This document shows, in pieces, positions 23,539 to 49,279 of a DNA stretch of 64,000 nucleotides. This DNA comes from Amphiscolops sp. MND2022. Its lineage: Eukaryota. The notes under the pieces are model-generated. The model was not told the origin of the DNA and ran no database searches. It saw only the letters and a program-made list of their open reading frames with translations. Position numbers and translations under genes: made by a program. The stretch spans positions 12,214,001-12,278,000 of the forward strand of contig OZ076411.1 of NCBI GenBank assembly GCA_964187785.1. Reading direction: 5' to 3'. Positions within the stretch are counted from its first letter, which is position 1. Each line of letters begins with the position of its first letter.

Positions 23539-23753
23539 TCACTTCACTCTGAGGATGAGATGAACTCCAGAGTCAGTGGACACAATGCCACTCATCTGTC
23601 CCTCCTGGAGAGCGAAGGAGGCGTCTTCGAAGGCTTTCTGCATCTTGCCCCTGTCGAACATGCCCAAGTCGCCCCCGGAGCGGGCAGAGGAACAGTCGCT
23701 GTTGGACGCAGCCAGTTCCGAGAATTTGGCAATCAGTTCGCTTCCACTGAGGC
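23539..23753 (-). CDS. PIN1: Pin1-type parvulin PPIase, last exon
   Basis: After TTTTCAG acceptor: (G)[70 protein letters not shown], matching the Pin1 catalytic half (SDCSS, GDLG, QMQKPFEDA-like, TDSG.H). Confidence 0.95.
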
Positions 23754-23799
23754 CTGAAAAACAACACTCTCTATCTTATTAAGACGTCAAATGGATTTG

Positions 23800-25221
23800 A
23801 ACAAGACGGGAACGTCTAAAGTCGGCGCTATATCTAAGGCTCAAAAAGCGCAGTTTTCAAAATATGCGTAGGACGTTTTCATGAAGGACTCCTGTTTTCG
23901 AGGGGGCCTTTGGAAACAATAAAAATTTCGAAAAAAGTCTCAGCGCCGAAAGAATTGAAAAGGGGCCCTTTAGTCTCGTCCGGTTTTGTAGATTACGTTG
24001 AAAAAGTAAAAAATAAAAGGGGGACCCTTTGCACTAAGTTTCCACTGGCCGGACTTGGCCTCAGTAGTTTCTGTAAAAAGTGGACCATTCAGTGTGAGGT
24101 CTGTGGTCTAGAGAAAAAAAGTGTCACTGTAAGAGTCAGGCATTTTTCCTTCAAAGAAAAATGCGCCGACAAAAAACAACCAGTCATTACAGAATGAGCA
24201 TTGAGCTTCTCTAATGCAGATTGAAAAGGTGACATTAATCATTGCCCAATCCATTACCTGATGTTTTTTACCATCGAGAGGTAAACAACAAGCCGGGAAC
24301 GGCCCAAGTCGGCGCCCCGCTCAAGGTACAAAAGAGTGAAGTTTTTCAAATATGCTAAAGGACACTATTGTTGAAATTTTATCAATTCTCCAGTGCCGAA
24401 AAATACCGGAAGGGATACGTATAAGACTCGAAAATAACTTTCTCGCCAACTGGAAACAAAAAACTTTCTTTAAAAAAATCGGTATTTTTCTTTCGGAAAA
24501 AAGTCTCATAGTGCCGAAATACCCAAAAGGACACCCAAACGCTTTTTCCAAGCCAAAAACGTGAAGGGAGTACCATTTTACCGAAAGCAATTTCAAAAAA
24601 AGCCGCATCGTGTCGAAAAAAGTCGTTAATTAAACTACTTGAAACAGTAAAAACAAGCCGGGACCAGCTCAAGTCGGCGCCATATCTAAGGATCAAAAAT
24701 AGCAAAAGGACTTCAAAGTGTCGAAGTATTCTCTTCTACAGCACCCGAAAAAAAATTGAAAAGTCTCGCAATGCCGAAAAAAACTGAAAGGGGGACCCTA
24801 TAGTCTCGTCCGGTATATGTTACGCGGAAAAAAGGAAAAACCTTTGTTTCGGTTCCCTGGGGCAACAGGTACAATTTGGCGTCTCAAAAACACTGACGAA
24901 AAACATGAATATAGTCGACTCTTTTCTTAAGAAAAGCTCCGACTAAAAACTGAAGGGAGACACCCTTTGGTTCAATGAAAAAATTTCCAAAAGTCTCATA
25001 GCGCCAAAAAAAAGCGGAAGGCGGATCCTTCTGTTGTGGAATGGTTTTGTATCTCATGTTAGAGGCTTTGGATGCGTTCAAATTCAAGTAGCAAGTACTT
25101 ATCGTAAAAGTGCACCGTGCACAAAAAGTGGACCATTCAGAGTGAAACTGACAAAAAAAAACTAGTCACTGTAATAGTCGGGCACTTTTTCCTGAACCGA
25201 AAAAAAAACGCCGACTAAAAA
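23800..25221 (-). mobile_element. Three stacked HINE-like elements filling the Pin1 intron
   Basis: AACAAG ends at 23800, 24287 and 24652; opposite ends ATGCGCCGACAAAAAA (24161-24176) and CGCCGACTAAAAA (25209-25221). Confidence 0.8.
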
Positions 25222-25454
25222 CACACAAATTATTTTTCTATTGGAAAAAGACCGCGGAACTTTTTTGTAAACCCCACTCTAGCTATGAATTCCACTTTTA
25301 AAATTGCTCCAAATATGAAAAACACTTATTACTCCAATTTTCAGCAAAGAAAAATCATAAGTGCACTTACTGTTTTCGAGAAAATACAAATGCTGTTTTC
25401 AATTATAACTTCAGCGCGACAGGTGCCTGTTGAACACTTAGATGAAGAGCTAAC

Positions 25455-25601
25455 CGTTCAACTGTGATTGGTAGCCTTCGAGTTGCTGGATGGCCTCTTC
25501 TTTGGAGATTGTGATGTTGGGGTTCTTCCACGAGGATGGTCTTCTAGAGTCTCGGTGCTTCACCAACAAATGCAAACATTGCACACGCTCAGGCATTATA
25601 T
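25455..25601 (-). CDS. PIN1: Pin1-type parvulin, middle exon
   Basis: TTGCAG acceptor, GTTAGC donor, phase 1/1; IMPERVQCLHLLVKHRDSRRPSSWKNPNITISKEEAIQQLEGYQSQLN with the Pin1 phosphate-binding loop; joins the last exon in frame (GGC). Confidence 0.95.
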
Positions 25602-25632
25602 CTGCAACAAACTTTTCTGTTAAACAAAACCG

Positions 25633-25974
25633 TTTTTAGCCGGATCCTTTTCCCTTAAGGAAAAAAGCCCGACTATTACAGTGGGTAGTTTTTCAGTTCA
25701 CTCTGAATGGTCCAATTTTGTTGTTCATTTGTTCAACTTTTTAGCCGAGATATTTTAGTTCGGATATAACGTTTTCAAAGTTCGGATATAGCGTTTTCAA
25801 AATTTAGATGAAACGTTTTCAAAGATCTTATATGACGTTTCCAAAGTTCAGATATAACGTTTTCAAAGTTCGGATACTGTTTTCATTTTCCCCAAATTTT
25901 TCAATTTTTCCACAAAATTTCACAATTTGTTGAGGCTTAGATATGGTGCCAACTTGGGCCGTTCCCGTCTTCTT
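25633..25974 (+). mobile_element. HINE-like element with internal 22-bp tandem array
   Basis: Start TTTTTAGCCGG...AAAAAAGCCCGACTATTACAGTG; end GGTGCCAACTTGGGCCGTTCCCGTCTTCTT; about 6 copies of GTTCGGATATAACGTTTTCAAA at about 25757-25885. Confidence 0.75.
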
Positions 25975-26660
25975 AGTCATCAGAATTTGATACCAGAAGA
26001 GTTAGATTACAAATTACACTGCAAAGATGCTTCCGAGCTATACAAAAACAATCGCTCAAAAACTGATTTTCATCAATCAGTTCAAAATTTTCAAACGCTT
26101 CCGAGAGAAAAAGCTAACAAAGCTGCATCAATACATTGAGGGTCCAATTAGTCTTGCAAAAATCAATAGAGACTCACTCCTCACAAGGAAATTAACTTAA
26201 TAACCTTTCATAAAGTTATCAACAACCGGCAACGGCCAAATTTCAAAAGTCTCGCATAAGGCCGAATAAATCAAGAGAAAAAAAGCCGCATAAAAGTCAC
26301 AATTACATTTACTGCCACTTTAGGACCAACATTTGTTGGCAAAAAAGCAAAACGAGAGAATCGGCTCAAGTCAAATCATTCTAAGCATTTATATATTACA
26401 CAAAAAAGTTGGTTGGAAGCCGGAGAATTTTTTCAATTTCCCAGCGGTAGGAAAATTTCGGTATTTTGATGCTTTAAAAGTTTTGGATTGTAAGCGTGAA
26501 GTCTGTTAAAAAGGGCTTTTCAGTGTGATGTCTGTCACCTGACAAAACACTTGCCGTAGTGAGAGTCGGGCACTTTTTAGCCAGCAATGCTCTAATCAGT
26601 GGATAGTTTTCCCCCCGGGAGCACCTGAAAGGAAGCCATTTTCCCCTGAAAGGAAGCCAC

Positions 26661-27114
26661 TTTTTAGTTGGCGCTTTTCTAGAGAAAAGAGTAGACTATA
26701 GTCATTGCTTTTCGTCAGTGTTTTTTTAAGACCACCTGAACTGACCAAAATAGTTCTACCAAAAGTTCTACAAAATTTCAAATTTCACCTGTTGGCCCAG
26801 GGAACAGAACCAAAAAGTTTCCCGCATAACATACAATGCCGGACGAGACCAAAGGATCCCCCTTTGTTTTTTTCGGCATTGCGAGACTTTTTCGGAAGAT
26901 ATTTTTCCCCAAAGGGTCCCCCCTTCAATTTTTTTTGGGTTTTGCGACAGACTGGGTATAGAAAAATCCCAAAGGGTCGCCCTTTCAATTTTTTTTCGGC
27001 GTTGAGACTTTTTTCAAAAAAAAATTTAGTGCTGTAGAAGAGAATACTTTGATGTCCTTTTGTTATTTTTGAGCCTTGGATATGGCGCCGACTTGCGCCG
27101 GTCCCGGCTTGTTT
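26661..27114 (+). mobile_element. HINE-like element, complete copy
   Basis: TTTTTAGTTGGCGCTTTTCTAGAGAAAAG start; GGCGCCGACTTGCGCCGGTCCCGGCTTGTTT end. Confidence 0.8.
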
Positions 27115-27145
27115 ATAAATTTCAGAGTAAATTTTCCGTTGGGAA

Positions 27146-27216
27146 GCTTGATGGCCTCGTGGTTAGTGCGTAAGCTCGGGAAGCTGAAGGACGTGAGTCG
27201 AATCCCGCTCAGGGTC
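27146..27216 (+). mobile_element. tRNA-derived SINE head
   Basis: A box TGGCCTCGTGG and degenerate B box GAGTCGAATCC at tRNA-like spacing; cloverleaf imperfect. Confidence 0.55.
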
Positions 27217-27504
27217 GGTCTTTTATTTTCAAAAGAATTCTAGAAGCGTTTTCTTGTATAATGTAGAATGAGATATAATCCTTAAATAATGTCAAAAATT
27301 TCGGATATAGCGCATTTTTGTGTCTTGCAAGACGGAAATTATGGGTCCAAACGTAGCCAACATTGAACATTTCATTTCTTCGATTGAACTTATTTAGAAG
27401 CATGTTGCCAAATTTCGCAAGAACCTAAAATAATTCGGATATAACGTATGGAATTCAGATATATAGTATCTTGTTTTTATTGATTTCCACAATTTCGGCC
27501 TAAC

Positions 27505-27526
27505 TTCCCGACTGGTTGATTTCCAT
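27505..27526 (-). CDS. PIN1: Candidate first coding exon of the Pin1-type gene (MEINQSG+N)
   Basis: TTTTTTCTCCTAG acceptor at 27538, AAAAATGG start context, phase-1 GTTAGG donor compatible with the middle exon; model gives 127 aa. Confidence 0.5.
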
Positions 27527-27777
27527 TTTTAACGAAACTAGGAGAAAAAAGTGTCTCCATCTTCGATTTTTTCGGTTTCGTGTGACGAGAAAAAAATAAT
27601 TTCGTTAAAGGGACCCAACCATCTTTGGTTTTCTGATAATTTCAAAGGACCACATTCGTGATTTATTAAGCAGCCAGACATTTCCAGATTTCACATGAAC
27701 AGAGCATTTTAGCATATTTAAAAGTTTTTGCATTTTTTTAACCCTAATGAACCCAGTGGTACTTTAAAGCAGCCTAC

Positions 27778-28240
27778 CTTTTTTCAATTTCTGATTCCTT
27801 TTGCCAGTAGCCCATATTCTCTTCTCTAGCACAGTTTTTTTTCAACAATTCATTGATTAACTCAGATTGATTTGAATGGCACAAGCATTAGAAAAAGTGA
27901 ATGTCTCCAAACCTGAAAAAAAAACGTTTTTCGCACAAAAAATGGTTACAATTTTCCAAAATTCATTTTTTGGCAAAATAGTTTTCTCAAAAGTCTTTGG
28001 CTAATAACAACCCATAACAAAGCAACCCCATACCCTTCCACAACAAGCCATTGTGCGACAAACCCTGTTACAATATCCTGTTACTACAAGCCCCCGCAGC
28101 GATACCGGAAAAAGAAACTAAAATTCTGAAGAATGGGGCGCGCGGCGACAGGGACTCACCTGGTCAAAATGAAAGCCGAATATGTTTCAAACGCCCTGTA
28201 GTTCATTTCTCTGGTACGCGTAGTTGTGATACTAATGATT
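27778..28240 (-). other. Probable 5' untranslated exons of the Pin1-type gene (27778-27912 and 28153-about 28240)
   Basis: TTTTTTTCAG acceptor and GTAGGC donor around 27778-27912; strong GTGAGT donor at about 28152; CCAAT box (AGCCAATCA) at about 28356. Confidence 0.4.
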
Positions 28241-28964
28241 TAAATCAGATTTTTGAAAACTTGCAAACCGCCCAGGTCAATTAGGGTTAATCTTTAGCGG
28301 GGCACCAATTCCGAGTATCCCTGTTTGTCACAGCAAAATGCACTGACTCGAGCGTAGCCAATCAATATGCGCATACTTCAAAACAACATAACTCGTCCGG
28401 ATACAAAACTTGCAACGGAAAGTTCAATAAAATTGTCAACACTTCGTGGTTAACTTGAAAATTTTTGGCAAAAAACTTTCTCCATTCAAAAGTGTGCAAT
28501 TTGTTTTGACTACCAAAACATTCAAAAATTGTAGAATTGCTGGATACTGGAAAATTTTAGAGTTCCTTTCTGACAAAAGTTCGTATCTCCAGAAATACAT
28601 GTTATGAACCCAATAATTTCTCGTCGTTAAACACTGTAGAAATTCCTTTTTTTTCTGGATATCACATTGCGGGATTTTGATGAAAAACGCAGTAGAGATA
28701 AACTTTCTCTTTCAATATGAAATAGTGGCGAGAAATGGTTTTGAAATTTTCCAAAAATCACACCAAATTATACTAAACCCAAATTGCATTGGGCTTTCGG
28801 TGCCGTTTTTGCTCAACCTTATCTCTGGTCAAACTTACTCATTTACATTTCCTTTATGACTCAATAGTGGGACTCTGAAAATGCGGGGAAAACGGGGGAA
28901 CCGGGAAATAATTCAATTCAATGTGTGATCAAATGTAGCATCGACGATCACATGTTTATCAAAA

Positions 28965-29711
28965 TCATTTCCTAGATGTGGAAACTCGAGATGAGGATCG
29001 CGAGACTCTCGATGATCGCGTGGACTTTCGCCTTTTCTCCCTCCTTATCTTGGCGAGGAGCTGCTGGTATTCTTGTCGGCTGGCTTTGGATGCCTCAAAT
29101 CGCTTTCGTCGCTGGGCTCGCAACTTTCTCTTTCGCTGAAGTCGCTCGGGAGTAACCAGTCGCTGGATCTTGGGAGCGACAGTCCTCGGGGTTCCGTCCT
29201 TTCGTGGGGGTCTGTTGGGCTTAACCTTACGGATAACATATTGACGCACATCATCCTGCTTGCTCAAGTTGAACATCTTTCGGATCTTGCTGGCTCGTTT
29301 GGGGCCCATAGATCTGGGTCGGATGGAATCGGTCAGACCTGGGATCTCCGCAGGTCCTCGTTTCACAATTTTCAGACACAGCACGCTCATGTTATGCACG
29401 TCAATGATGCACCCACGCACAGACCTTCTTTTGCGTTCTCCCTTTCGCTTCCACGATTGGAAGCATTGAACACCAGCCTTCAGCAACAGTCGCACCCGGT
29501 TGGATGTGAGAACTCCCTGTTTCATGGCGAAACCGTCCTTGTCAGACCCACCTTGGATCTTGGCCACGTAACCTTTCCAGTCGTTTCCCAGGAAGTCCAT
29601 ATCAACGAACTGGGCCATACGCTTGTCGTTCAAATACTTCAACTTCTTTTCGTCATTGAACTCGATCTGCACCTGGTTGCCCGAAGCGGGGTACGCAATG
29701 TTGAACTTCAT
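28965..29711 (-). CDS. RPS6: 40S ribosomal protein S6 (eS6), intronless CDS with an acceptor 12 nt upstream of the ATG
   Basis: [13 protein letters not shown]..., [69 protein letters not shown], Ser-rich basic tail; TTTTTCAG acceptor at 29724, possible donor GTATTC at 29807. Confidence 0.98.
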
Positions 29712-30445
29712 CTTACCAGTGATCTGAAAAATTAAAAACTACCGTTAAGAATCAAAATCGACCAAACTTTTCAGAAACGCACCCACAGAGCGTTCAAGCA
29801 TGAATACCTTCCAGAGCTAACATCCCCAGACCTTGAAGAATTTCCAAAACACAAAAAGTTCATTACTTTTCCCCATTACACGAGTGACATCTGGATGAAA
29901 AATGAAATTCATTTAGCTAGAACTATCCAAATTGTTTCAAATTCATCAAGCTAGTCGGCATGATTGTTCGCCAATTCGGTTACATGACAATTTCAGGAGA
30001 GAATTTCCCATCACAGAGTTGCATCATTTCCAAAATTAGATGCTTAGAGTATGTTTGCACACTACATCAATTGGGTTGATTAGTCAAGGTCGCCGAGAAT
30101 CCTACTGGTTTGAGTCACTCAGATCCATGCCCGCCCATTCAAACGCAATAAATTCATTAGAATCCGGTGACAACTTTGATAATTGAAAGAATACTTTTTT
30201 CAAGGTAAAGCAAAAAGGTGCAAATTGAAAAAGATACAAATGCTGTTTCACAAATAACTTAACACGTTAAAATTATGAACGTTTGAGGTGGCGAAGCTTT
30301 GTTCTGTGCGAACGCAAATCAAATATTTAATGGAATGTAATGGAACTATACAAAATCAAATTTTTCTTGTTGAGCTCAATTTCTACACATCAATAAGACA
30401 AATCAAAATCCATAACATAAATCATTTAGGAAAAACGAACGAAAA

Positions 30446-32434
30446 TTATCTTTTCGCAGTTGAGAAGCGACTCAAAGGATCGAAAAATTTGCTCTCAAGA
30501 CCTCTTTGTTGAACAGCATTCCTTTTCTTTTCCTTCTTTTCTTGCAAAAGTTTTTGCTTCCTGATTTCACTTCTCGCCTTTTCTTTCAAACCAGACTTTC
30601 TCTGTTCTTTCTTCATTGATTTGCCTTTTCCTTTGGCTTTCGCTTTCAAAACTATTTTGGGTATTTTAACATCATCTGGGTTCTTAGAAACTCTTTCGTC
30701 TGCTTCGACCCGGAGCAATGAGTCATTATCTAGAGATATCATTTCGGGTTGGATCTTGTCCAATAAATTCTTGACCTCAGCTTCTTGTCGTTGCTTTTTG
30801 GTCGCATACGGGTTAACTTCCAGGCCATCGAAATTGGGTTCTCCGGCCCCCGGAACCAGCAAACTAGATACGCCCATTTGGTGACCAATTCCAACGACGT
30901 CTTCGTAAGGACAAAATTGTACGTTGCCAATTTGCGTTTTATGGAGTCTATGACTAAGATATGGCTTGGCAATCGACTTTGAACCACAAATGTCTCGGAA
31001 AATGTCGACATTTCTCGGAAATGCAGCCGCTAGTAAGCCTTTCTGACTGAAGTCCAAGCTACGGGCAGTTACACTTAGCTTGTAGGAATGAACCGGGGAA
31101 AACATTCTCAAGTCAAATATACGGAGTCTTCTGTCAATTCCACTGGTAGCCAAATAATGTCCAGAGTTATCCACGGCCATGCTGGCAACCGCCGATCGAT
31201 GACAAGCCATTTTGGCTAATGGTTTATTGCTACTTGGAGCCCATAAATTCACAATTCCATTGGGGTGTGCAGTAAAAACGACTGCATTTTGAGGGTTTTG
31301 GACCATTTCACGGACCCCTTTTAACTTTGTGCGCAAGGTGGCCACAATTTGACCAATTGAAACGTCAAGGTAGGTGAGAAAACCCAACGAGTTCATGGAT
31401 GTTAACAAAAAGTGGTACGGTAAAAACTGCATGGTATTAACATTGTCAAGTTGCCTCAACGCATGAAGCTCCACGCCTTGATTGTCATAGATATGGACCC
31501 ATCGCTTCTGAGCAGCTGCGAACATATTTTCGTTATGCAACCAACAGATGTCGTTCACATGTTCCATGACATTGATTTCACACTTCAGCATTTTACTGAA
31601 CCAGTCAAAAGCGGCTATATGACCCAGCTTTCCGCCAATCAGAAGAAACTTTCCATTACGAGTATATTTCACTTTATAAGGTCCGAACTCTTTGAGATTC
31701 AAATCGAACCGCTTCACTGCACTTGAAACGTCAACATTTTTCTGCAACAGATCTTGGTCAAGGTAAACCAGTTCTTCATCTCCGATGTCGATATAGCCCG
31801 ATTCCTCTGACAAAAATATATCATATTTCGCGGCTTTCTCAGTGGCTTCTTCAATGGCTGATTCTTCTTTTTGTATCATCTCTTTCACTTTGGTCTGTCT
31901 GATGTGACTGTTCAAAACCTTTTCACCTTTGTGATACAACTTCATTGTTTTCTCGGGAATGGTGATTTTTGTTTCGGTTGCTTTTTGTTTACCAACTCGC
32001 CGTTTCTTTGCCTTTTGAGCCGGTTTTGGGCTTTGTGTAGATGCTGCCGCGGCTGCTGCGTTAAACATACCATCATCAGTATTTGCATCAAAAGGAGTAC
32101 TTGTAACATTGGACTTCAAAGTCGCAATTGTGGGGTCAAGAACACCGCCAAAGGATTTCTTACTCTTCCTGTTCCTGTCTTTGCTGGCCCCTAATTTTCT
32201 TCTCATTTTGGAAGCCAAAGATTCTGATCTTCGTGGTTTAATATTTGTCTCTACTGTCTGCATGATGTTGGAATGTGCGTGAACAACACGTGAAGAGTCG
32301 TCATTTCCTGGGTCTGATTCGAAGTCACTGCCTGATGGAATTTCCATTTCCAAAACTTCATTGTCACCATCTTCAGTCGCAAATGCACGGACATCGCCCG
32401 CTGCAGCACCTTGTCTGTCGATGAAGAAACTCAT
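30446..32434 (-). CDS. WDR46: WD-repeat protein 46 / Utp7 (SSU processome), intronless CDS
   Basis: FDLNLKEFGPYKVKYTRNGKFLLIGGKLGHIAAFDW, LPYHFLL, FCPYEDVVGIGHQMGVSSLLVPGAGEPNFDGLEVNPYATKKQRQEAEVKNLLDKIQPEMISL (BING4CT); first ATG at 32434; acceptor at 32510. Confidence 0.95.
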   Translation of the reverse strand: MSFFIDRQGAAAGDVRAFATEDGDNEVLEMEIPSGSDFESDPGNDDSSRVVHAHSNIMQTVETNIKPRRSESLASKMRRKLGASKDRNRKSKKSFGGVLDPTIATLKSNVTSTPFDANTDDGMFNAAAAAASTQSPKPAQKAKKRRVGKQKATETKITIPEKTMKLYHKGEKVLNSHIRQTKVKEMIQKEESAIEEATEKAAKYDIFLSEESGYIDIGDEELVYLDQDLLQKNVDVSSAVKRFDLNLKEFGPYKVKYTRNGKFLLIGGKLGHIAAFDWFSKMLKCEINVMEHVNDICWLHNENMFAAAQKRWVHIYDNQGVELHALRQLDNVNTMQFLPYHFLLTSMNSLGFLTYLDVSIGQIVATLRTKLKGVREMVQNPQNAVVFTAHPNGIVNLWAPSSNKPLAKMACHRSAVASMAVDNSGHYLATSGIDRRLRIFDLRMFSPVHSYKLSVTARSLDFSQKGLLAAAFPRNVDIFRDICGSKSIAKPYLSHRLHKTQIGNVQFCPYEDVVGIGHQMGVSSLLVPGAGEPNFDGLEVNPYATKKQRQEAEVKNLLDKIQPEMISLDNDSLLRVEADERVSKNPDDVKIPKIVLKAKAKGKGKSMKKEQRKSGLKEKARSEIRKQKLLQEKKEKKRNAVQQRGLESKFFDPLSRFSTAKR

Positions 32435-34884
32435 AATTCCACAGATAGAAACTGTACTGGAAGGTAAACACCGGAAAATAATTACATTCAATTATTACAT
32501 TGCCGACACCTGAAAAAGGTTTAAGGGTTTCTGTAGAGCTTCATAATATAATAGAGAACTTCAATACTTTTTTGTACGAAATTTTTCATTGCAGCTCCAA
32601 AATACTCTGATTGATTGAATTTTGATGGGATCAGGTTATTAATCAAAATGTCGACCTGGAAAAATAACTGACTACGGAAACTTTCGAGAAAAATTTAAAC
32701 AACATTTCAATTCCTGAATAAAACTAAGTTGCGAACTCCGTTCGTCTGTTCGTATGTCGTTAACGCCAGCAGTACGGTATAATATTTATAAATGAGTATT
32801 TCAACAGAATGATACAGCTAACTAAAAGTAATAACAGTAATTTTATATCAAAATCGCCGGCGTCAATTCAATTTACCTCATTAATATCTCCACCGTTCAT
32901 TTTCATTTTTTTCACTATAAACAATTCCAAGAAAATTTGATTTCTAAAACACTTCCCAAAAATTGTGACCATAGAATGCTGGAAAGGTGACATTACCTTG
33001 TATTTTCAATTTGAAGATGGACATTGATTGAATCTACCCAAATTTCATTTTACAAGTTCAACTTTTAGATGCGGAGCTCTATTTTTGAGGAAAATTCATC
33101 AAATTTGTGGTCGTAGCAAACAAGTTTTTGTTAGCACCAAAAATGATGTTATGGATGCGGCCTTTTTCTGCTGAGGTCACCTCTTTGCTTGCATTGGCTC
33201 CTTGTCGCAAGCTTTCTTCCTCCAATTGAACTTCAGGAACTGAACTCACTCGTGGTCGGATCAAACAGCGCTTTAAGCTTCGGCAGCACGTGAATGAAAA
33301 GATGTGCCAGCAAAATGGCAAAGATGAACTACTAACAGCAGTGAACCCAAAGATATACATGTACATATGCGCATTCTCAATACCCTCCTGTTTTACACCA
33401 TGTCACTAGATGCCATGTACACTATGTCATGTAGATTTCTAGTCACAATTATTACTCTGAACATGAAAAAAATCATACACTTGTATGTCATTCAGCTCGG
33501 GTCTTGATTTACTTACCATAAGCTGGTTAATTAAAGGGAAAATAATTTTTGGAAAAAATCTCAAACCCAACTTTGATTACATTACCTAATCACTTTCATT
33601 AATTAGTCGGCAGCCGTGATTTTGGCCGCACAGGATTATAGCCGCTTGAGATTATAACCAAAGCTACATATATTAACTTTTTTCTTTTGACTATTTAATG
33701 TGTAATCATAATAGTTACGAAATTAAAGGTTCTCTCAAGTGATTCGGCCGATTACAATTGGGAATTCAATCTTATTCTGCTAAAAAACTATTCGTCTTTA
33801 ATCCTGTTCGGCTATAATACATACCACCCAATTAATCGTTAGCATAATTAATCGTGAGCAGCTAGACGTTTTTTTATCACGTATCAAATCATCCAACATT
33901 ATCCGGGAGTCTTTCTGAATTATTTGCAAGAGCTAGGTCTCTTATCGCAATTTTGTTGTTGAGGGTTCAATGCTAGGCTAGATGGTGGCTGTTTAGCACT
34001 TTGCCACTTGGTCAACAGTGTTTAATCCCAAAGAAGAGCCGAAAGGGCGGTGAAAAAAGGAGGAGTTAAAGTACATATGATACAAGTTAATGTTGACAGT
34101 AAAATATATCTGCTGCTGCTGCTGTCTCAGTAAACTGTCGAGGCCAATTGTAGTGACCTCGTTATAAATCTATAATTTAAGCACCATTTGTTATTTTAAA
34201 GGCAAATAAATTGGTCCCTTTCACTTATCGGTGCGACTTAGTCTCCAACAAAACCATTCCTCGTGAACAAAAACATGGTAAACAATTTTACATGTATTCT
34301 ATTCAAAAACATCTCTCCTGATTTATTATCATCATCATGAGCGGTATGGCACTCAAATTCTATCGAAAATTTCTATTGAAAACTTAAATTCATTTATCAT
34401 TTTAGAGTCTTTTGATTGGATTAATACCAAGAACATATTTTTGTCACATTAGATTTAGATTAATCAAACGTTCGAGTTTTCTTCTTCAACATCTAAAATC
34501 AATCATTTCCCATTCCTTCTTCAGGGGCCTAATAACTTTCAATGTTTAAGACCATAATTGTTGAGGTAGTTCTGCTATGATAGTGAGAAATTCGGAGGGC
34601 GCACAGATAAAAGATTGAGGGTCAGAGAAAGCAGTGAAAGGTCATCGAGGTCGAATGAGAATAAGAGTAAAAGAGATGAAAAAGGAAAAAAAAACTAGGG
34701 GCGATGGCAAATGGGAGGAGTTAGGAGAACGGGCCCAAAGGAAGTAATTGCACCCAATGACAGTAGCAGTAAGGTAAATTTATGTATGATGCATCAATGT
34801 CCATCCATGTTACCTTTGTTAGAGTGCAAAAGCTAGAAAGTATTATCAAATACGTGTATTCTCTTTAGGCACACAATACATGTA

Positions 34885-40464: not shown

Positions 40465-41437
40465 TGATACGCGGCAATGAACTCAATCAGGCCTCAATTC
40501 GATTTTTAGAAAAGTCTACACATTGACTTAGTTGGTACAAAAACCGATTGTATCGTCAGAAAACTGCCATCCACCGGTTACATCTAACGAACATCAGACA
40601 TACTGAAAAAATTATTTAACCCGTATCAGATGTGTGAGTGAATTCATATACTAGTTTGCTTCATGTGAACAAAAGCGGCAAGAAACAAGCCGGGAACAAT
40701 CATTTTGCATCTACAATGGGAAACTATTGTGAACTTTTTCACCAGATTTACAGGCCTGGAAAAATCCCGAAGGCGTTACAATGACTCGAAAACCTACCTG
40801 GGAACATAGAAAACTCAAGGTTTTTCTCTCAATATCTGAAAAAGTTCCTTCATGAAAAGATCCGATGAAAAATTCCATAGTGCCGAGGTAATTCAATGGG
40901 TAAACGGGAACCGCAAGGAACCCGATCAAGCACTTGTGGTCCAAGGCGTTCGATTTGAAGCAAAGTGACCATTTACCCAAGACGTTCGGCCTGGAAAAAT
41001 TAGGCGACTGTTAGGGCCCCAACTCCTTCTGATCGTAGCTGGGTTTTCGGATTATTGAACATTAAATAATGTCAATACTTTATTTTCAGATGTGTGTTGA
41101 GAAAGTGATTCAGTAAAGTGAAGATAAAAATAAGAGGTACATGAACTAGCTGTCTGGTATAGTGGGTGGCTGTAAATAGGTCGAATTTTTCTGGTCGAAA
41201 GGACAGAGGTCGAACCTTTTGATGGAATTGCAGGGATCGAATGGAATGCGGTCGAATTTTATCGTATTTGTTGTATGGCTCGGTCGCTTCGCTCCCTTCG
41301 CCAGGTAGCAACATTGAGGCATGGCCATATGGCACGTCGCTCCGCTTCGCTTCGCTCCTGCATTCAGGGCACTAGGGGTATGTGAACATATATAGCCTAA
41401 TTGTTGTGATAAACTTATTAAATAGTTTCCGGTTGTG

Positions 41438-48500: not shown

Positions 48501-49279
48501 TGTAGACAACTTTTGCATACAGAGTAGACAAAATCAGGACCCCATTCATATAATTTGAAGAGGCTATCAAAGACAGTTTTTGTATCATTTTGTTGATACA
48601 CCACAATTTTTCGTTAATCATGTTAACAGAAGTTACATCTTGTCTTTGCCTCAATGCCTTAGCCAACCTTGCTCGTAGTAGCGTGAGATCATCGTTGATT
48701 TAAATTTTATTTTCACTATCTTTGAGCATCTTTTTGTTGGTCATCAGCCCGATTTTGGTCTGTCTCCTTACATATTTTGCAATGATAGGGCGCCCTTGGC
48801 CAGGCTTCACATTTCTGCTGGGAACCCTATGGCAGATGCTGATGTCCGCTCTGGATACCTGACATCCCGCCTTTTCTGCCACATCGATCACAGCCTGATA
48901 CACGTCCTCATTTGGTGCCTCCTCCACCCCAAATATGCGGACATTGTCCCGCCTTCCATATTGCTGGTTTGAATCGGCATTGAAAAGACTGGACAACTTT
49001 CCGTTGATTTGAGGCTTTTCTGCAATTTTGGCAAGTTTGGACTGCAAGTTGGCCAACTCAGCTGCTGCACAGAAGCCACATAGGAAGGGGCGGTCCATGA
49101 AACCCTTGTGGATCTTTTTCGGGAGCCATGTGGGGACCCAGGATTGGCATCCCTTTCCCTTGTCGGGACCCTTGCCAGTACATTCGATTAGGTGGGTGGA
49201 CCCCTCTTCGTCTGATTGAGAGCCAGTTCTAGTAGTCGGCATCGCGTCTATTTAATAAGTTTATCACAACAATTAGGCT
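45515..49279 (-). mobile_element. LINE-B, full-length L2/Crack/Daphne-type, lightly decayed
   Basis: ORF1 48700-49242 (QQYGRRDNVRIFGV, DISICHRV, RPIIAKYVRR) frameshifted into 46981-48666 (APE: HLNIRS, CLSETW, IGDINID, LIDH, ADH); RT 45713-46972 (NYRPISVL, LDLQKAFDTI, GVPQGSILGPLLF, FADD); (TAA)-like tail near 45515. Confidence 0.92.

What the first reader, a model, noticed from the sequence alone, without database searches (positions are those of the whole stretch)
23539..27537. Animal Pin1-type isomerase apparently lacking the WW domain
Seen: two exons encode a complete Pin1 PPIase domain with the phosphate-binding K/R/R loop (KHRDSRR), the catalytic Cys (SDCSS) and both His. The only phase-compatible upstream exon I found adds just MEINQSGN (127 aa total), and the middle exon has its own Met (MPERV, 118 aa). 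A scan of 25602-28960 found no WW-like exon, and a CCAAT box lies at about 28356. Known: metazoan and fungal Pin1/Ess1 carry an N-terminal WW domain, whereas plant Pin1At and some protist enzymes do not. Inference: independent WW loss in an animal, or a WW-less paralogue.
Basis: partly seen in the sequence, partly recalled or inferred. Interest (0 to 1): 0.7.

Follow-up and report, generated by a model that had tools for sequence, protein, structure and literature searches.

The report
WW-less Pin1 paralogue in acoel worms
This acoel worm has, besides a normal two-domain Pin1 on another chromosome, a second intact and conserved Pin1-type prolyl isomerase gene that encodes only the catalytic domain (118 aa), an architecture described in the reviews read here for plants and trypanosomes rather than for animals.

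Summary
On the minus strand, two coding exons (25596-25455 and 23753-23539) encode a complete 118-aa Pin1-type parvulin domain. It keeps the phosphate-binding K/R/R cluster, the catalytic Cys and both His.

No WW exon exists anywhere in the 64-kb window. The 5' side is bounded by a complete ribosomal protein S6 gene.

The genome, which carries the Symsagittifera roscoffensis spliced leader, also has a canonical WW+PPIase Pin1 (160 aa) on contig C10. The window gene is therefore a WW-less paralogue, not a Pin1 that lost its WW.

An orthologue of the same length exists in the acoel Convolutriloba macropyga. It is 118 aa, aligns without gaps at about 70% identity, shares the phase-1 intron and starts with the same MPE.VQC. 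Between the two, dN is about 0.22 and dS is saturated, so the gene is under purifying selection.

The origin is unresolved. A duplication within acoels is the most parsimonious reading, and AU tests reject neither it nor an algal origin.

No RNA data were reachable, so the 5' end is inferred. It may be a spliced-leader acceptor 5 nt before the ATG.

This is a new animal member of the known single-domain Pin1 class and is of modest interest.

The parts
25455..25596 (-). Coding exon A: ATG (25596-25594) to the GT donor; residues 1-47 plus the first base of codon 48. It holds beta1 and the phosphate-binding loop (H9, K13, R18, R19).
25597..25603 (-). AG acceptor (25603-25602) and a 5-nt leader before the ATG. 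Candidate spliced-leader trans-splice site or 5'-UTR intron acceptor (inferred, not shown).
   Evidence: SL trans-splicing affects 30% of genes in S. roscoffensis. A similar acceptor lies 12 nt before the RPS6 ATG.
25636..25638 (-). In-frame TAA, 13 codons upstream of the ATG. It closes the reading frame in unspliced sequence.
   Evidence: read directly
23754..25454 (-). Phase-1 intron (GT...AG), full of high-copy repeats. The Convolutriloba orthologue has an intron at the same position and phase.
   Evidence: (repeat depth)
23539..23753 (-). Coding exon B: residues 48-118 plus TGA. It holds C68, L77, M85, F89, S109 and H112.
27505..27526 (-). It is phase-compatible, but no conservation or transcript evidence supports it.
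28965..29711 (-). Upstream same-strand neighbour: an intronless ribosomal protein S6 gene. It bounds the 5' side of the Pin1-like gene.

Best explanation
A functional single-domain (WW-less) Pin1-type parvulin gene, a paralogue of the worm's canonical WW+PPIase Pin1. Translation starts at the Met at 25596 and gives a 118-aa protein that is just the catalytic domain. It should bind and isomerise pSer/pThr-Pro bonds through its own basic phosphate-binding loop and the Cys/His/Ser/His active site, without a WW targeting module, as plant Pin1At and trypanosome TbPin1 do. Shown: the gene structure, the absence of a WW, the coexistence with a canonical Pin1, the conservation in a second acoel and the purifying selection. 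Inferred: the enzymatic specificity, expression, and a 5' end formed by spliced-leader trans-splicing or a non-coding 5' exon at the AG 5 nt before the ATG. The most parsimonious origin is a duplication of Pin1 in the acoel lineage before Symsagittifera and Convolutriloba split, with the WW part lost or never copied.
For: (1) The PPIase domain is intact. Exon B scores Rotamase 66 bits. The orthologue P0076 matches human Pin1 residues 52-162 at E about 1e-37. The window protein aligns to P0076 without gaps. The equivalents of H59, K63, R68, R69, C113, L122, M130, F134, S154 and H157 are therefore all present. (2) The AF2 model of the orthologue has pLDDT 97 and TM 0.91 to the human Pin1 catalytic domain. 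(3) No WW, whole or half, is found in 64 kb of window, in 31 kb of the Convolutriloba locus, or by Pfam WW genome-wide within the window; positive controls scored 21-65 bits. (4) RPS6 lies immediately upstream on the same strand. (5) A canonical Pin1 lies on C10, with WW at 44.7 bits and Rotamase at 72.5 bits. (6) The orthologue P0076 is 118 aa, is named 'NIMA-interacting 1-like' by NCBI, carries no WW, and has the same phase-1 intron. (7) dN is 0.21-0.24 while dS is 1.8 or more, with third-position identity 41% against 75% and 83% at positions 1 and 2. (8) The window protein and P0076 form a clade at 98/94. (9) The reviews read state that WW-less Pin1At, MdPin1, TcPin1, TbPin1 and the isolated human PPIase domain rescue yeast ess1 mutants.
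Against: There is no transcript evidence for this genome. No RNA run was found, and the runs laid were genomic contigs colinear with the introns. The window's protein is absent from the protein collection. Activity and phospho-specificity are untested. The 5' end is unknown. The origin is unresolved, because AU tests do not reject alternative placements.
Confidence: 0.82

Rival explanations
1. The gene does have a WW domain. It would be encoded by an exon that was missed: far upstream, beyond RPS6, or split beyond recognition.
For: Exon A is preceded by a good AG acceptor 5 nt before the ATG, so some upstream exon or leader is probably spliced on. Canonical animal Pin1 genes split the WW by an intron.
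Against: No whole or half WW scores above 9 bits anywhere in the window on either strand, while half-WW controls score 21-40 bits. A complete RPS6 gene and then a WDR46-like gene lie upstream on the same strand. The orthologue is annotated as 118 aa without a WW, has no WW within 10 kb upstream, and has an in-frame stop before its ATG.
Confidence: 0.04
2. It is a decaying partial duplicate (pseudogene) of Pin1 that is not expressed.
For: No RNA evidence could be obtained. The protein is absent from the protein collection.
Against: The ORF is intact, both splice sites are canonical and every catalytic residue is kept. An orthologue of equal length exists in another acoel family. dN/dS is at most about 0.1 with dS saturated. 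The PPIase domain is closer to typical Pin1s (60-67% identity) than the worm's own WW-bearing copy is (50%).
Confidence: 0.04
3. The gene was acquired horizontally from a WW-less Pin1 of an alga or protist, for example the Tetraselmis photosymbiont, rather than by duplication of the animal Pin1.
For: Single-domain Pin1s are typical of algae, plants and protists. AU tests do not reject grouping the acoel pair with a red-alga-like WW-less clade (p 0.16) or with a chlorophyte (p 0.32).
Against: The best tree nests the pair among animal sequences. The best non-acoel matches are WW-bearing opisthokont Pin1s. Grouping with the host C10 copy is also not rejected (p 0.40). Both host paralogues share an uncommon 5-6-residue lengthening of the alpha1-alpha2 region. 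The phase-1 intron lies only 6 codons from the phase-1 intron conserved in sponge, sea-star and oyster Pin1 genes. The beta1-alpha1 loop has the majority length, without the extra residues I recall as typical of land-plant Pin1s.
Confidence: 0.06
4. The protein is the reader's 127-aa form, with MEINQSGN-I added from a mini-exon at 27526-27505.
For: The mini-exon has an ATG and a GT donor and is in the right phase for the acceptor at 25601. The region is single-copy.
Against: About one in three random ATG...GT stretches would be phase-compatible. The extension has no counterpart in the orthologue, which begins MPEQVQC at the aligned Met. The Met aligns to the first residues of the human PPIase domain, P52 onward.
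Confidence: 0.06

Closest known systems
Human Pin1 / Drosophila Dodo / yeast Ess1 (two-domain Pin1-type parvulins)
   Same: The PPIase domain is 56-67% identical to these. It has the same fold (TM 0.91), the same catalytic residues, basic phosphate-binding cluster and proline pocket.
   Different: There is no N-terminal WW domain and no linker; the protein starts at the equivalent of human residue 51-52. It has 5 extra residues between helices alpha1 and alpha2. It coexists with a canonical two-domain Pin1 in the same genome.
Single-domain Pin1-type parvulins: Arabidopsis Pin1At, apple MdPin1, Trypanosoma TbPin1/TcPin1
   Same: The architecture is the same: the catalytic domain alone, about 115-120 aa. 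By analogy the mode of action is the same (for Pin1At; for TbPin1).
   Different: The host is an animal. The sequence is nearer to opisthokont Pin1s than to Pin1At (108 bits) or TbPin1 (80 bits), against 131 bits for human Pin1. The beta1-alpha1 loop has the standard length, not the longer form I recall for land-plant Pin1s. In those organisms the single-domain protein is, to my knowledge, the only Pin1-type enzyme, whereas here it is a second copy.
Convolutriloba macropyga 'peptidyl-prolyl cis-trans isomerase NIMA-interacting 1-like' (P0076)
   Same: It is the orthologue: 118 aa, gapless alignment at about 70% identity, the same start and the same first intron.
   Different: The Convolutriloba gene has one more intron (phase 0, in ...SLQ|VFE...). 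It has N instead of R at the R69 position.
Par14/Par17 (PIN4)
   Same: It is also a WW-less parvulin of animals. A Par14-like exon exists elsewhere on C3.
   Different: By my recollection, not tested here, Par14 lacks the K63/R68/R69 cluster and the catalytic Cys and is not phospho-specific. The window gene is clearly Pin1-type.

Membership tests
Pin1-type parvulin (catalytic domain) | Parvulin fold | tested here: met
   Pfam Rotamase 66 bits on exon B. The AF2 model of the orthologue has pLDDT 97 and TM 0.91 to the human Pin1 PPIase domain.
Pin1-type parvulin (catalytic domain) | Basic phosphate-binding cluster (human K63, R68, R69) | tested here: met
   K13, R18 and R19 in HLLVKHRDSRRPSSW. 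Mapped through the PDB alignment of P0076 and the gapless window/P0076 alignment.
Pin1-type parvulin (catalytic domain) | Active-site residues (human H59, C113, S154, H157) and proline pocket (L122, M130, F134) | tested here: met
   H9, C68, S109, H112; L77, M85, F89.
Pin1-type parvulin (catalytic domain) | pSer/pThr-Pro-specific isomerase activity; rescue of yeast ess1 | not testable with these tools
   Needs an enzyme assay or complementation test.
Canonical metazoan/fungal Pin1/Ess1 (two-domain) | N-terminal group IV WW domain | tested here: not met
   No WW in the window, with controls at 21-65 bits. The orthologue is annotated without a WW. The C10 paralogue does meet this feature.
Single-domain Pin1-type parvulins (Pin1At/TbPin1 class) | Catalytic domain only, of about 115-120 aa, with Pin1-type residues | tested here: met
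   118 aa, with in-frame stops upstream in both species.
Single-domain Pin1-type parvulins (Pin1At/TbPin1 class) | Longer beta1-alpha1 loop (a feature of the land-plant subgroup only, from my own knowledge) | tested here: not met
   The W23-E33 segment has the majority length of 11, as in 198 of 212 sequences.
Expressed gene | Spliced transcripts | tested here: inconclusive
   No RNA run was found. The laid contigs were genomic. The only indirect support is purifying selection and the orthologue's annotation.

The most novel reading that the evidence does not exclude
Acoels have split Pin1 function between two genes. One is a slowly evolving single-domain enzyme that may be the main pSer/Thr-Pro isomerase. 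The other is a WW-bearing copy whose catalytic domain has diverged far from other Pin1s: tree branch 0.96 against 0.34, only about 50% identical to its paralogue, and N at the R69 position. A compact WW-less Pin1 gene in a monogenean flatworm suggests that this architecture arose more than once in animals. A less likely variant is that the single-domain gene came from the algal photosymbiont.
Probability: 0.2. Interest if true: 0.5.

Novelty: new member of a known kind. Interest (0 to 1): 0.35.

Why it matters
The two papers read here describe animal Pin1 orthologues as two-domain and the single-domain class as plant and trypanosomatid. A conserved, selectively maintained single-domain Pin1 living beside a canonical one in an animal is a natural experiment. 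It bears on what the WW domain and the interdomain contact contribute, a question the 2022 review names as open. It also corrects the gene model: 118 aa, not 127. The interest is modest, because the architecture and its likely mechanism are already known and NCBI already lists the Convolutriloba orthologue.

Tried and rejected
- **RNA evidence.** The look-up of sequencing runs returned only four runs of one sample with no RNA label. Laying them showed genomic contigs running straight through the exon-intron borders, so nothing was learned about splicing or the 5' end.
- **The window's own protein.** It was not in the protein collection at any length from 39 to 206 aa.
- **Phylogeny of the 116-column domain.** Only the window+Convolutriloba pair is well supported. 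AU tests rejected none of three placements: with the host C10 copy (p 0.40), with a red-alga-like WW-less clade (p 0.16), or with a chlorophyte (p 0.32).
- **Intron positions as a marker of animal descent.** The result is ambiguous. The acoel phase-1 intron lies 6 codons downstream of the phase-1 intron shared by sponge, sea-star and oyster Pin1 genes.
- **Fourth Rotamase hit.** The weak hit on C9 (L004, E 0.38) showed nothing parvulin-like in the one frame I translated, so I did not count it.
- **Mollusc 'WW-less' entries.** The 121-aa Mytilus entry has a catalytic domain almost identical to the WW-bearing Mytilus protein (tree branches 0 and 0.025), so it looks like an isoform or partial model of the same gene. 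The Mercenaria and Ruditapes entries are labelled isoform X2.
- **RNA genes.** Rfam and ARAGORN found none in 22-30 kb.
- **3' end.** No clear AATAAA was seen downstream of the stop codon.
Full report
**What is in the sequence**

The gene lies on the minus strand.
- Exon A is preceded by an AG at 25603-25602. Its ATG is at 25596-25594, and it ends at 25455 before a GT donor.
- Exon B follows an AG at 23755-23754. Its coding part runs 23753-23539 and ends in TGA.
- Spliced, the two exons give 118 codons.
- The reading frame upstream of the ATG is closed by a TAA at 25638-25636 (read).
- Exon B matches Pfam Rotamase at 66 bits.

**Which organism**

I checked this.
- The 32-nt spliced leader published for that species (PMC9911081) occurs exactly at 49247-49278, and with one mismatch at 41395-41426. 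None is expected by chance.
- The paper reports that 30.2% of genes are trans-spliced to this leader.

The genome is therefore S. roscoffensis or a very close relative.

**Is a WW exon hidden somewhere?**

I found none, on four lines of evidence.
- A genome-wide six-frame scan with Pfam WW gave 42 hits, none of them inside the window.
- I built an HMM from 51 Pin1 WW domains and scanned every open frame of 8 or more residues on both strands. This covered the whole window and the Convolutriloba locus.
  - The best window hit was 9 bits. It lies antisense to exon A.
  - The same HMM scored 60.7 bits on the C10 Pin1 and 64.7 bits on a sponge Pin1.
  - It scored 21-40 bits on the half-WW exons of sea-star and oyster Pin1 genes, so a split WW would also have been seen.
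- Upstream on the same strand lie two complete, intronless genes. These are ribosomal protein S6 (28965-29711; Ribosomal_S6e, 146 bits) and a WDR46/UTP7-like gene (30446-32491; BING4CT, 131 bits).
- The Pin1-like gene must therefore begin between 25601 and 28965, and that stretch holds no WW.

**The parvulin set of this genome**

Pfam Rotamase finds four places.
- **C10:** a canonical Pin1. Its WW exon (L001 809-979; WW, 44.7 bits) lies about 480 bp upstream of the PPIase exon (L001 1462-1773; Rotamase, 72.5 bits). Together they give 160 aa.
- **C3, this window:** the gene described here.
- **C3, 37.95 Mb:** an exon whose sequence I recognise as Par14-like.
- **C9:** one weak hit (E 0.38) that showed nothing parvulin-like in the one frame I translated.

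The window gene is thus a second Pin1-type gene, not the worm's only Pin1.

**Conservation**

A profile search returned P0076 from the acoel Convolutriloba macropyga. It is named 'peptidyl-prolyl cis-trans isomerase NIMA-interacting 1-like', is 118 aa long and has no WW.
- It aligns to the window protein end to end without a gap, at 69.5% identity. It starts MPEQVQCLH against the window's MPERVQCLH.
- Its gene has the same phase-1 intron (…SQLK|P against …SQLN|G), plus one extra intron.
- It has an in-frame stop 27 nt before its ATG.
- Between the two species dN is 0.21-0.24 and dS is saturated (1.8 or more). Third codon positions are 41% identical, against 75% and 83% for the first and second positions.

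This pattern is that of a protein-coding gene kept by selection since the two acoels diverged.

The canonical C10 copy is also constrained. Against a relative's intronless copy, dN is 0.03-0.04 and dS is 1.3 or more.

**Function**

P0076 aligns to human Pin1 residues 52-162 at E about 1e-37. Through the gapless alignment, the window protein carries the following equivalents of the human residues.

| Window residue | Human Pin1 residue |
|---|---|
| H9 | H59 |
| K13 | K63 |
| R18 | R68 |
| R19 | R69 |
| C68 | C113 |
| L77 | L122 |
| M85 | M130 |
| F89 | F134 |
| S109 | S154 |
| H112 | H157 |

- The AF2 model of the orthologue has pLDDT 97.1. It superposes on the human catalytic domain at TM 0.91.
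- The only length difference from human Pin1 is 5 extra residues between helices alpha1 and alpha2.
- Reviews state that the isolated human PPIase domain and the WW-less Pin1At, MdPin1, TbPin1 and TcPin1 rescue yeast ess1 mutants. They also describe phosphorylation-dependent catalysis for Pin1At and TbPin1.

The most likely mechanism is therefore pSer/pThr-Pro isomerisation by the catalytic domain alone. This step is inferred, not shown.

**The 5' end**

The AG acceptor 5 nt before the ATG resembles the AG 12 nt before the ATG of the neighbouring RPS6 gene. It would suit spliced-leader trans-splicing. I could not test this, because no RNA run was found and the runs laid were genomic contigs.

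**Origin**

- In a 66-sequence maximum-likelihood tree the window protein and P0076 form a clade at 98/94. The clade sits weakly among animal sequences, next to nematodes.
- The nearest non-acoel proteins are WW-bearing opisthokont Pin1s at 60-67% identity. The worm's own C10 copy is only 49.6% identical and sits on a long branch.
- AU tests reject none of three groupings: with the C10 copy (p 0.40), with a red-alga-like WW-less clade (p 0.16), or with a chlorophyte (p 0.32).
- Two weak clues favour a duplication inside the animal lineage.
  - Both host paralogues share an uncommon lengthening of the alpha1-alpha2 region: 27-28 residues against the usual 22-25, seen in about 7% of sequences.
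  - The acoel phase-1 intron lies 6 codons from the phase-1 intron conserved in sponge, sea-star and oyster Pin1 genes.

I treat duplication in acoels as the most parsimonious reading. Transfer from an alga is a minor possibility that is not excluded.

**Comparison with what is known**

The two papers read describe two classes of Pin1-type parvulins. The two-domain class is found in animals and fungi. The single-domain class is found in plants and trypanosomatids.

The window gene belongs by architecture to the second class, while its sequence is nearest to the first.

It is not unique among animals.
- The monogenean flatworm Cichlidogyrus casuarinus has a compact 118-aa WW-less gene. A divergent neighbour gene lies only 212 bp upstream, and no WW occurs in 13.7 kb.
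- The mollusc 'WW-less' database entries are of another kind. The Mytilus one looks like an isoform or partial model of the WW-bearing gene. The Mercenaria and Ruditapes ones are labelled isoform X2.

**Verdict**

The 'WW-less paralogue' reading is supported, and the 127-aa model is not. This is a new animal member of a known kind and is of modest interest.

Noticed in passing
L001 980-1461 (G000:C10) versus L010 3001-3486: The canonical Pin1 of this genome has a 482-bp GT...AG intron between ...KHDK and SRNPSSW. A relative's copy (ENA contig; protein P0086, 150 of 160 residues identical, dS above 1) is intronless. This is a recent intron gain or loss inside a conserved motif.
   Followed up: partly
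window 28965-32491, minus strand: Two intronless housekeeping genes, RPS6 (28965-29711) and a WDR46/UTP7-like gene (30446-32491), lie head to tail on the same strand as the Pin1-like gene. RPS6 has an AG acceptor 12 nt before its ATG. This could be a cluster of spliced-leader trans-spliced genes.
   Followed up: partly
L009 8001-8393 (Cichlidogyrus casuarinus contig): A monogenean flatworm has a compact 118-aa WW-less Pin1-type gene. A divergently transcribed neighbour lies 212 bp upstream, and there is no WW in 13.7 kb. It does not group with the acoel pair in the tree.
   Followed up: partly
L003 about 1500-1660 (G000:C3:37951659-37951814, minus strand): An exon that I recognise by its sequence as Par14/PIN4-like (…[22 protein letters not shown]…). 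It would be the third parvulin of this genome.
   Followed up: no
window 23754-25454 and 25604-27400: The intron and the upstream region are packed with very high-copy short repeats; summed contig depth reaches 10^5-10^6 against about 25-90 for unique sequence. A motif like GGCGCCGACTTGGGCCGGTCCCGGCTTGTT recurs here and also in the C10 locus.
   Followed up: no
G000:C10 Pin1 (L001) against all other Pin1s: The WW-bearing copy has the more divergent catalytic domain. It has N at the R69 position, MQPSFEKA instead of MQKPFEDA, and a tree branch of 0.96. Even so, it is under strong purifying selection against its close relative.
   Followed up: partly
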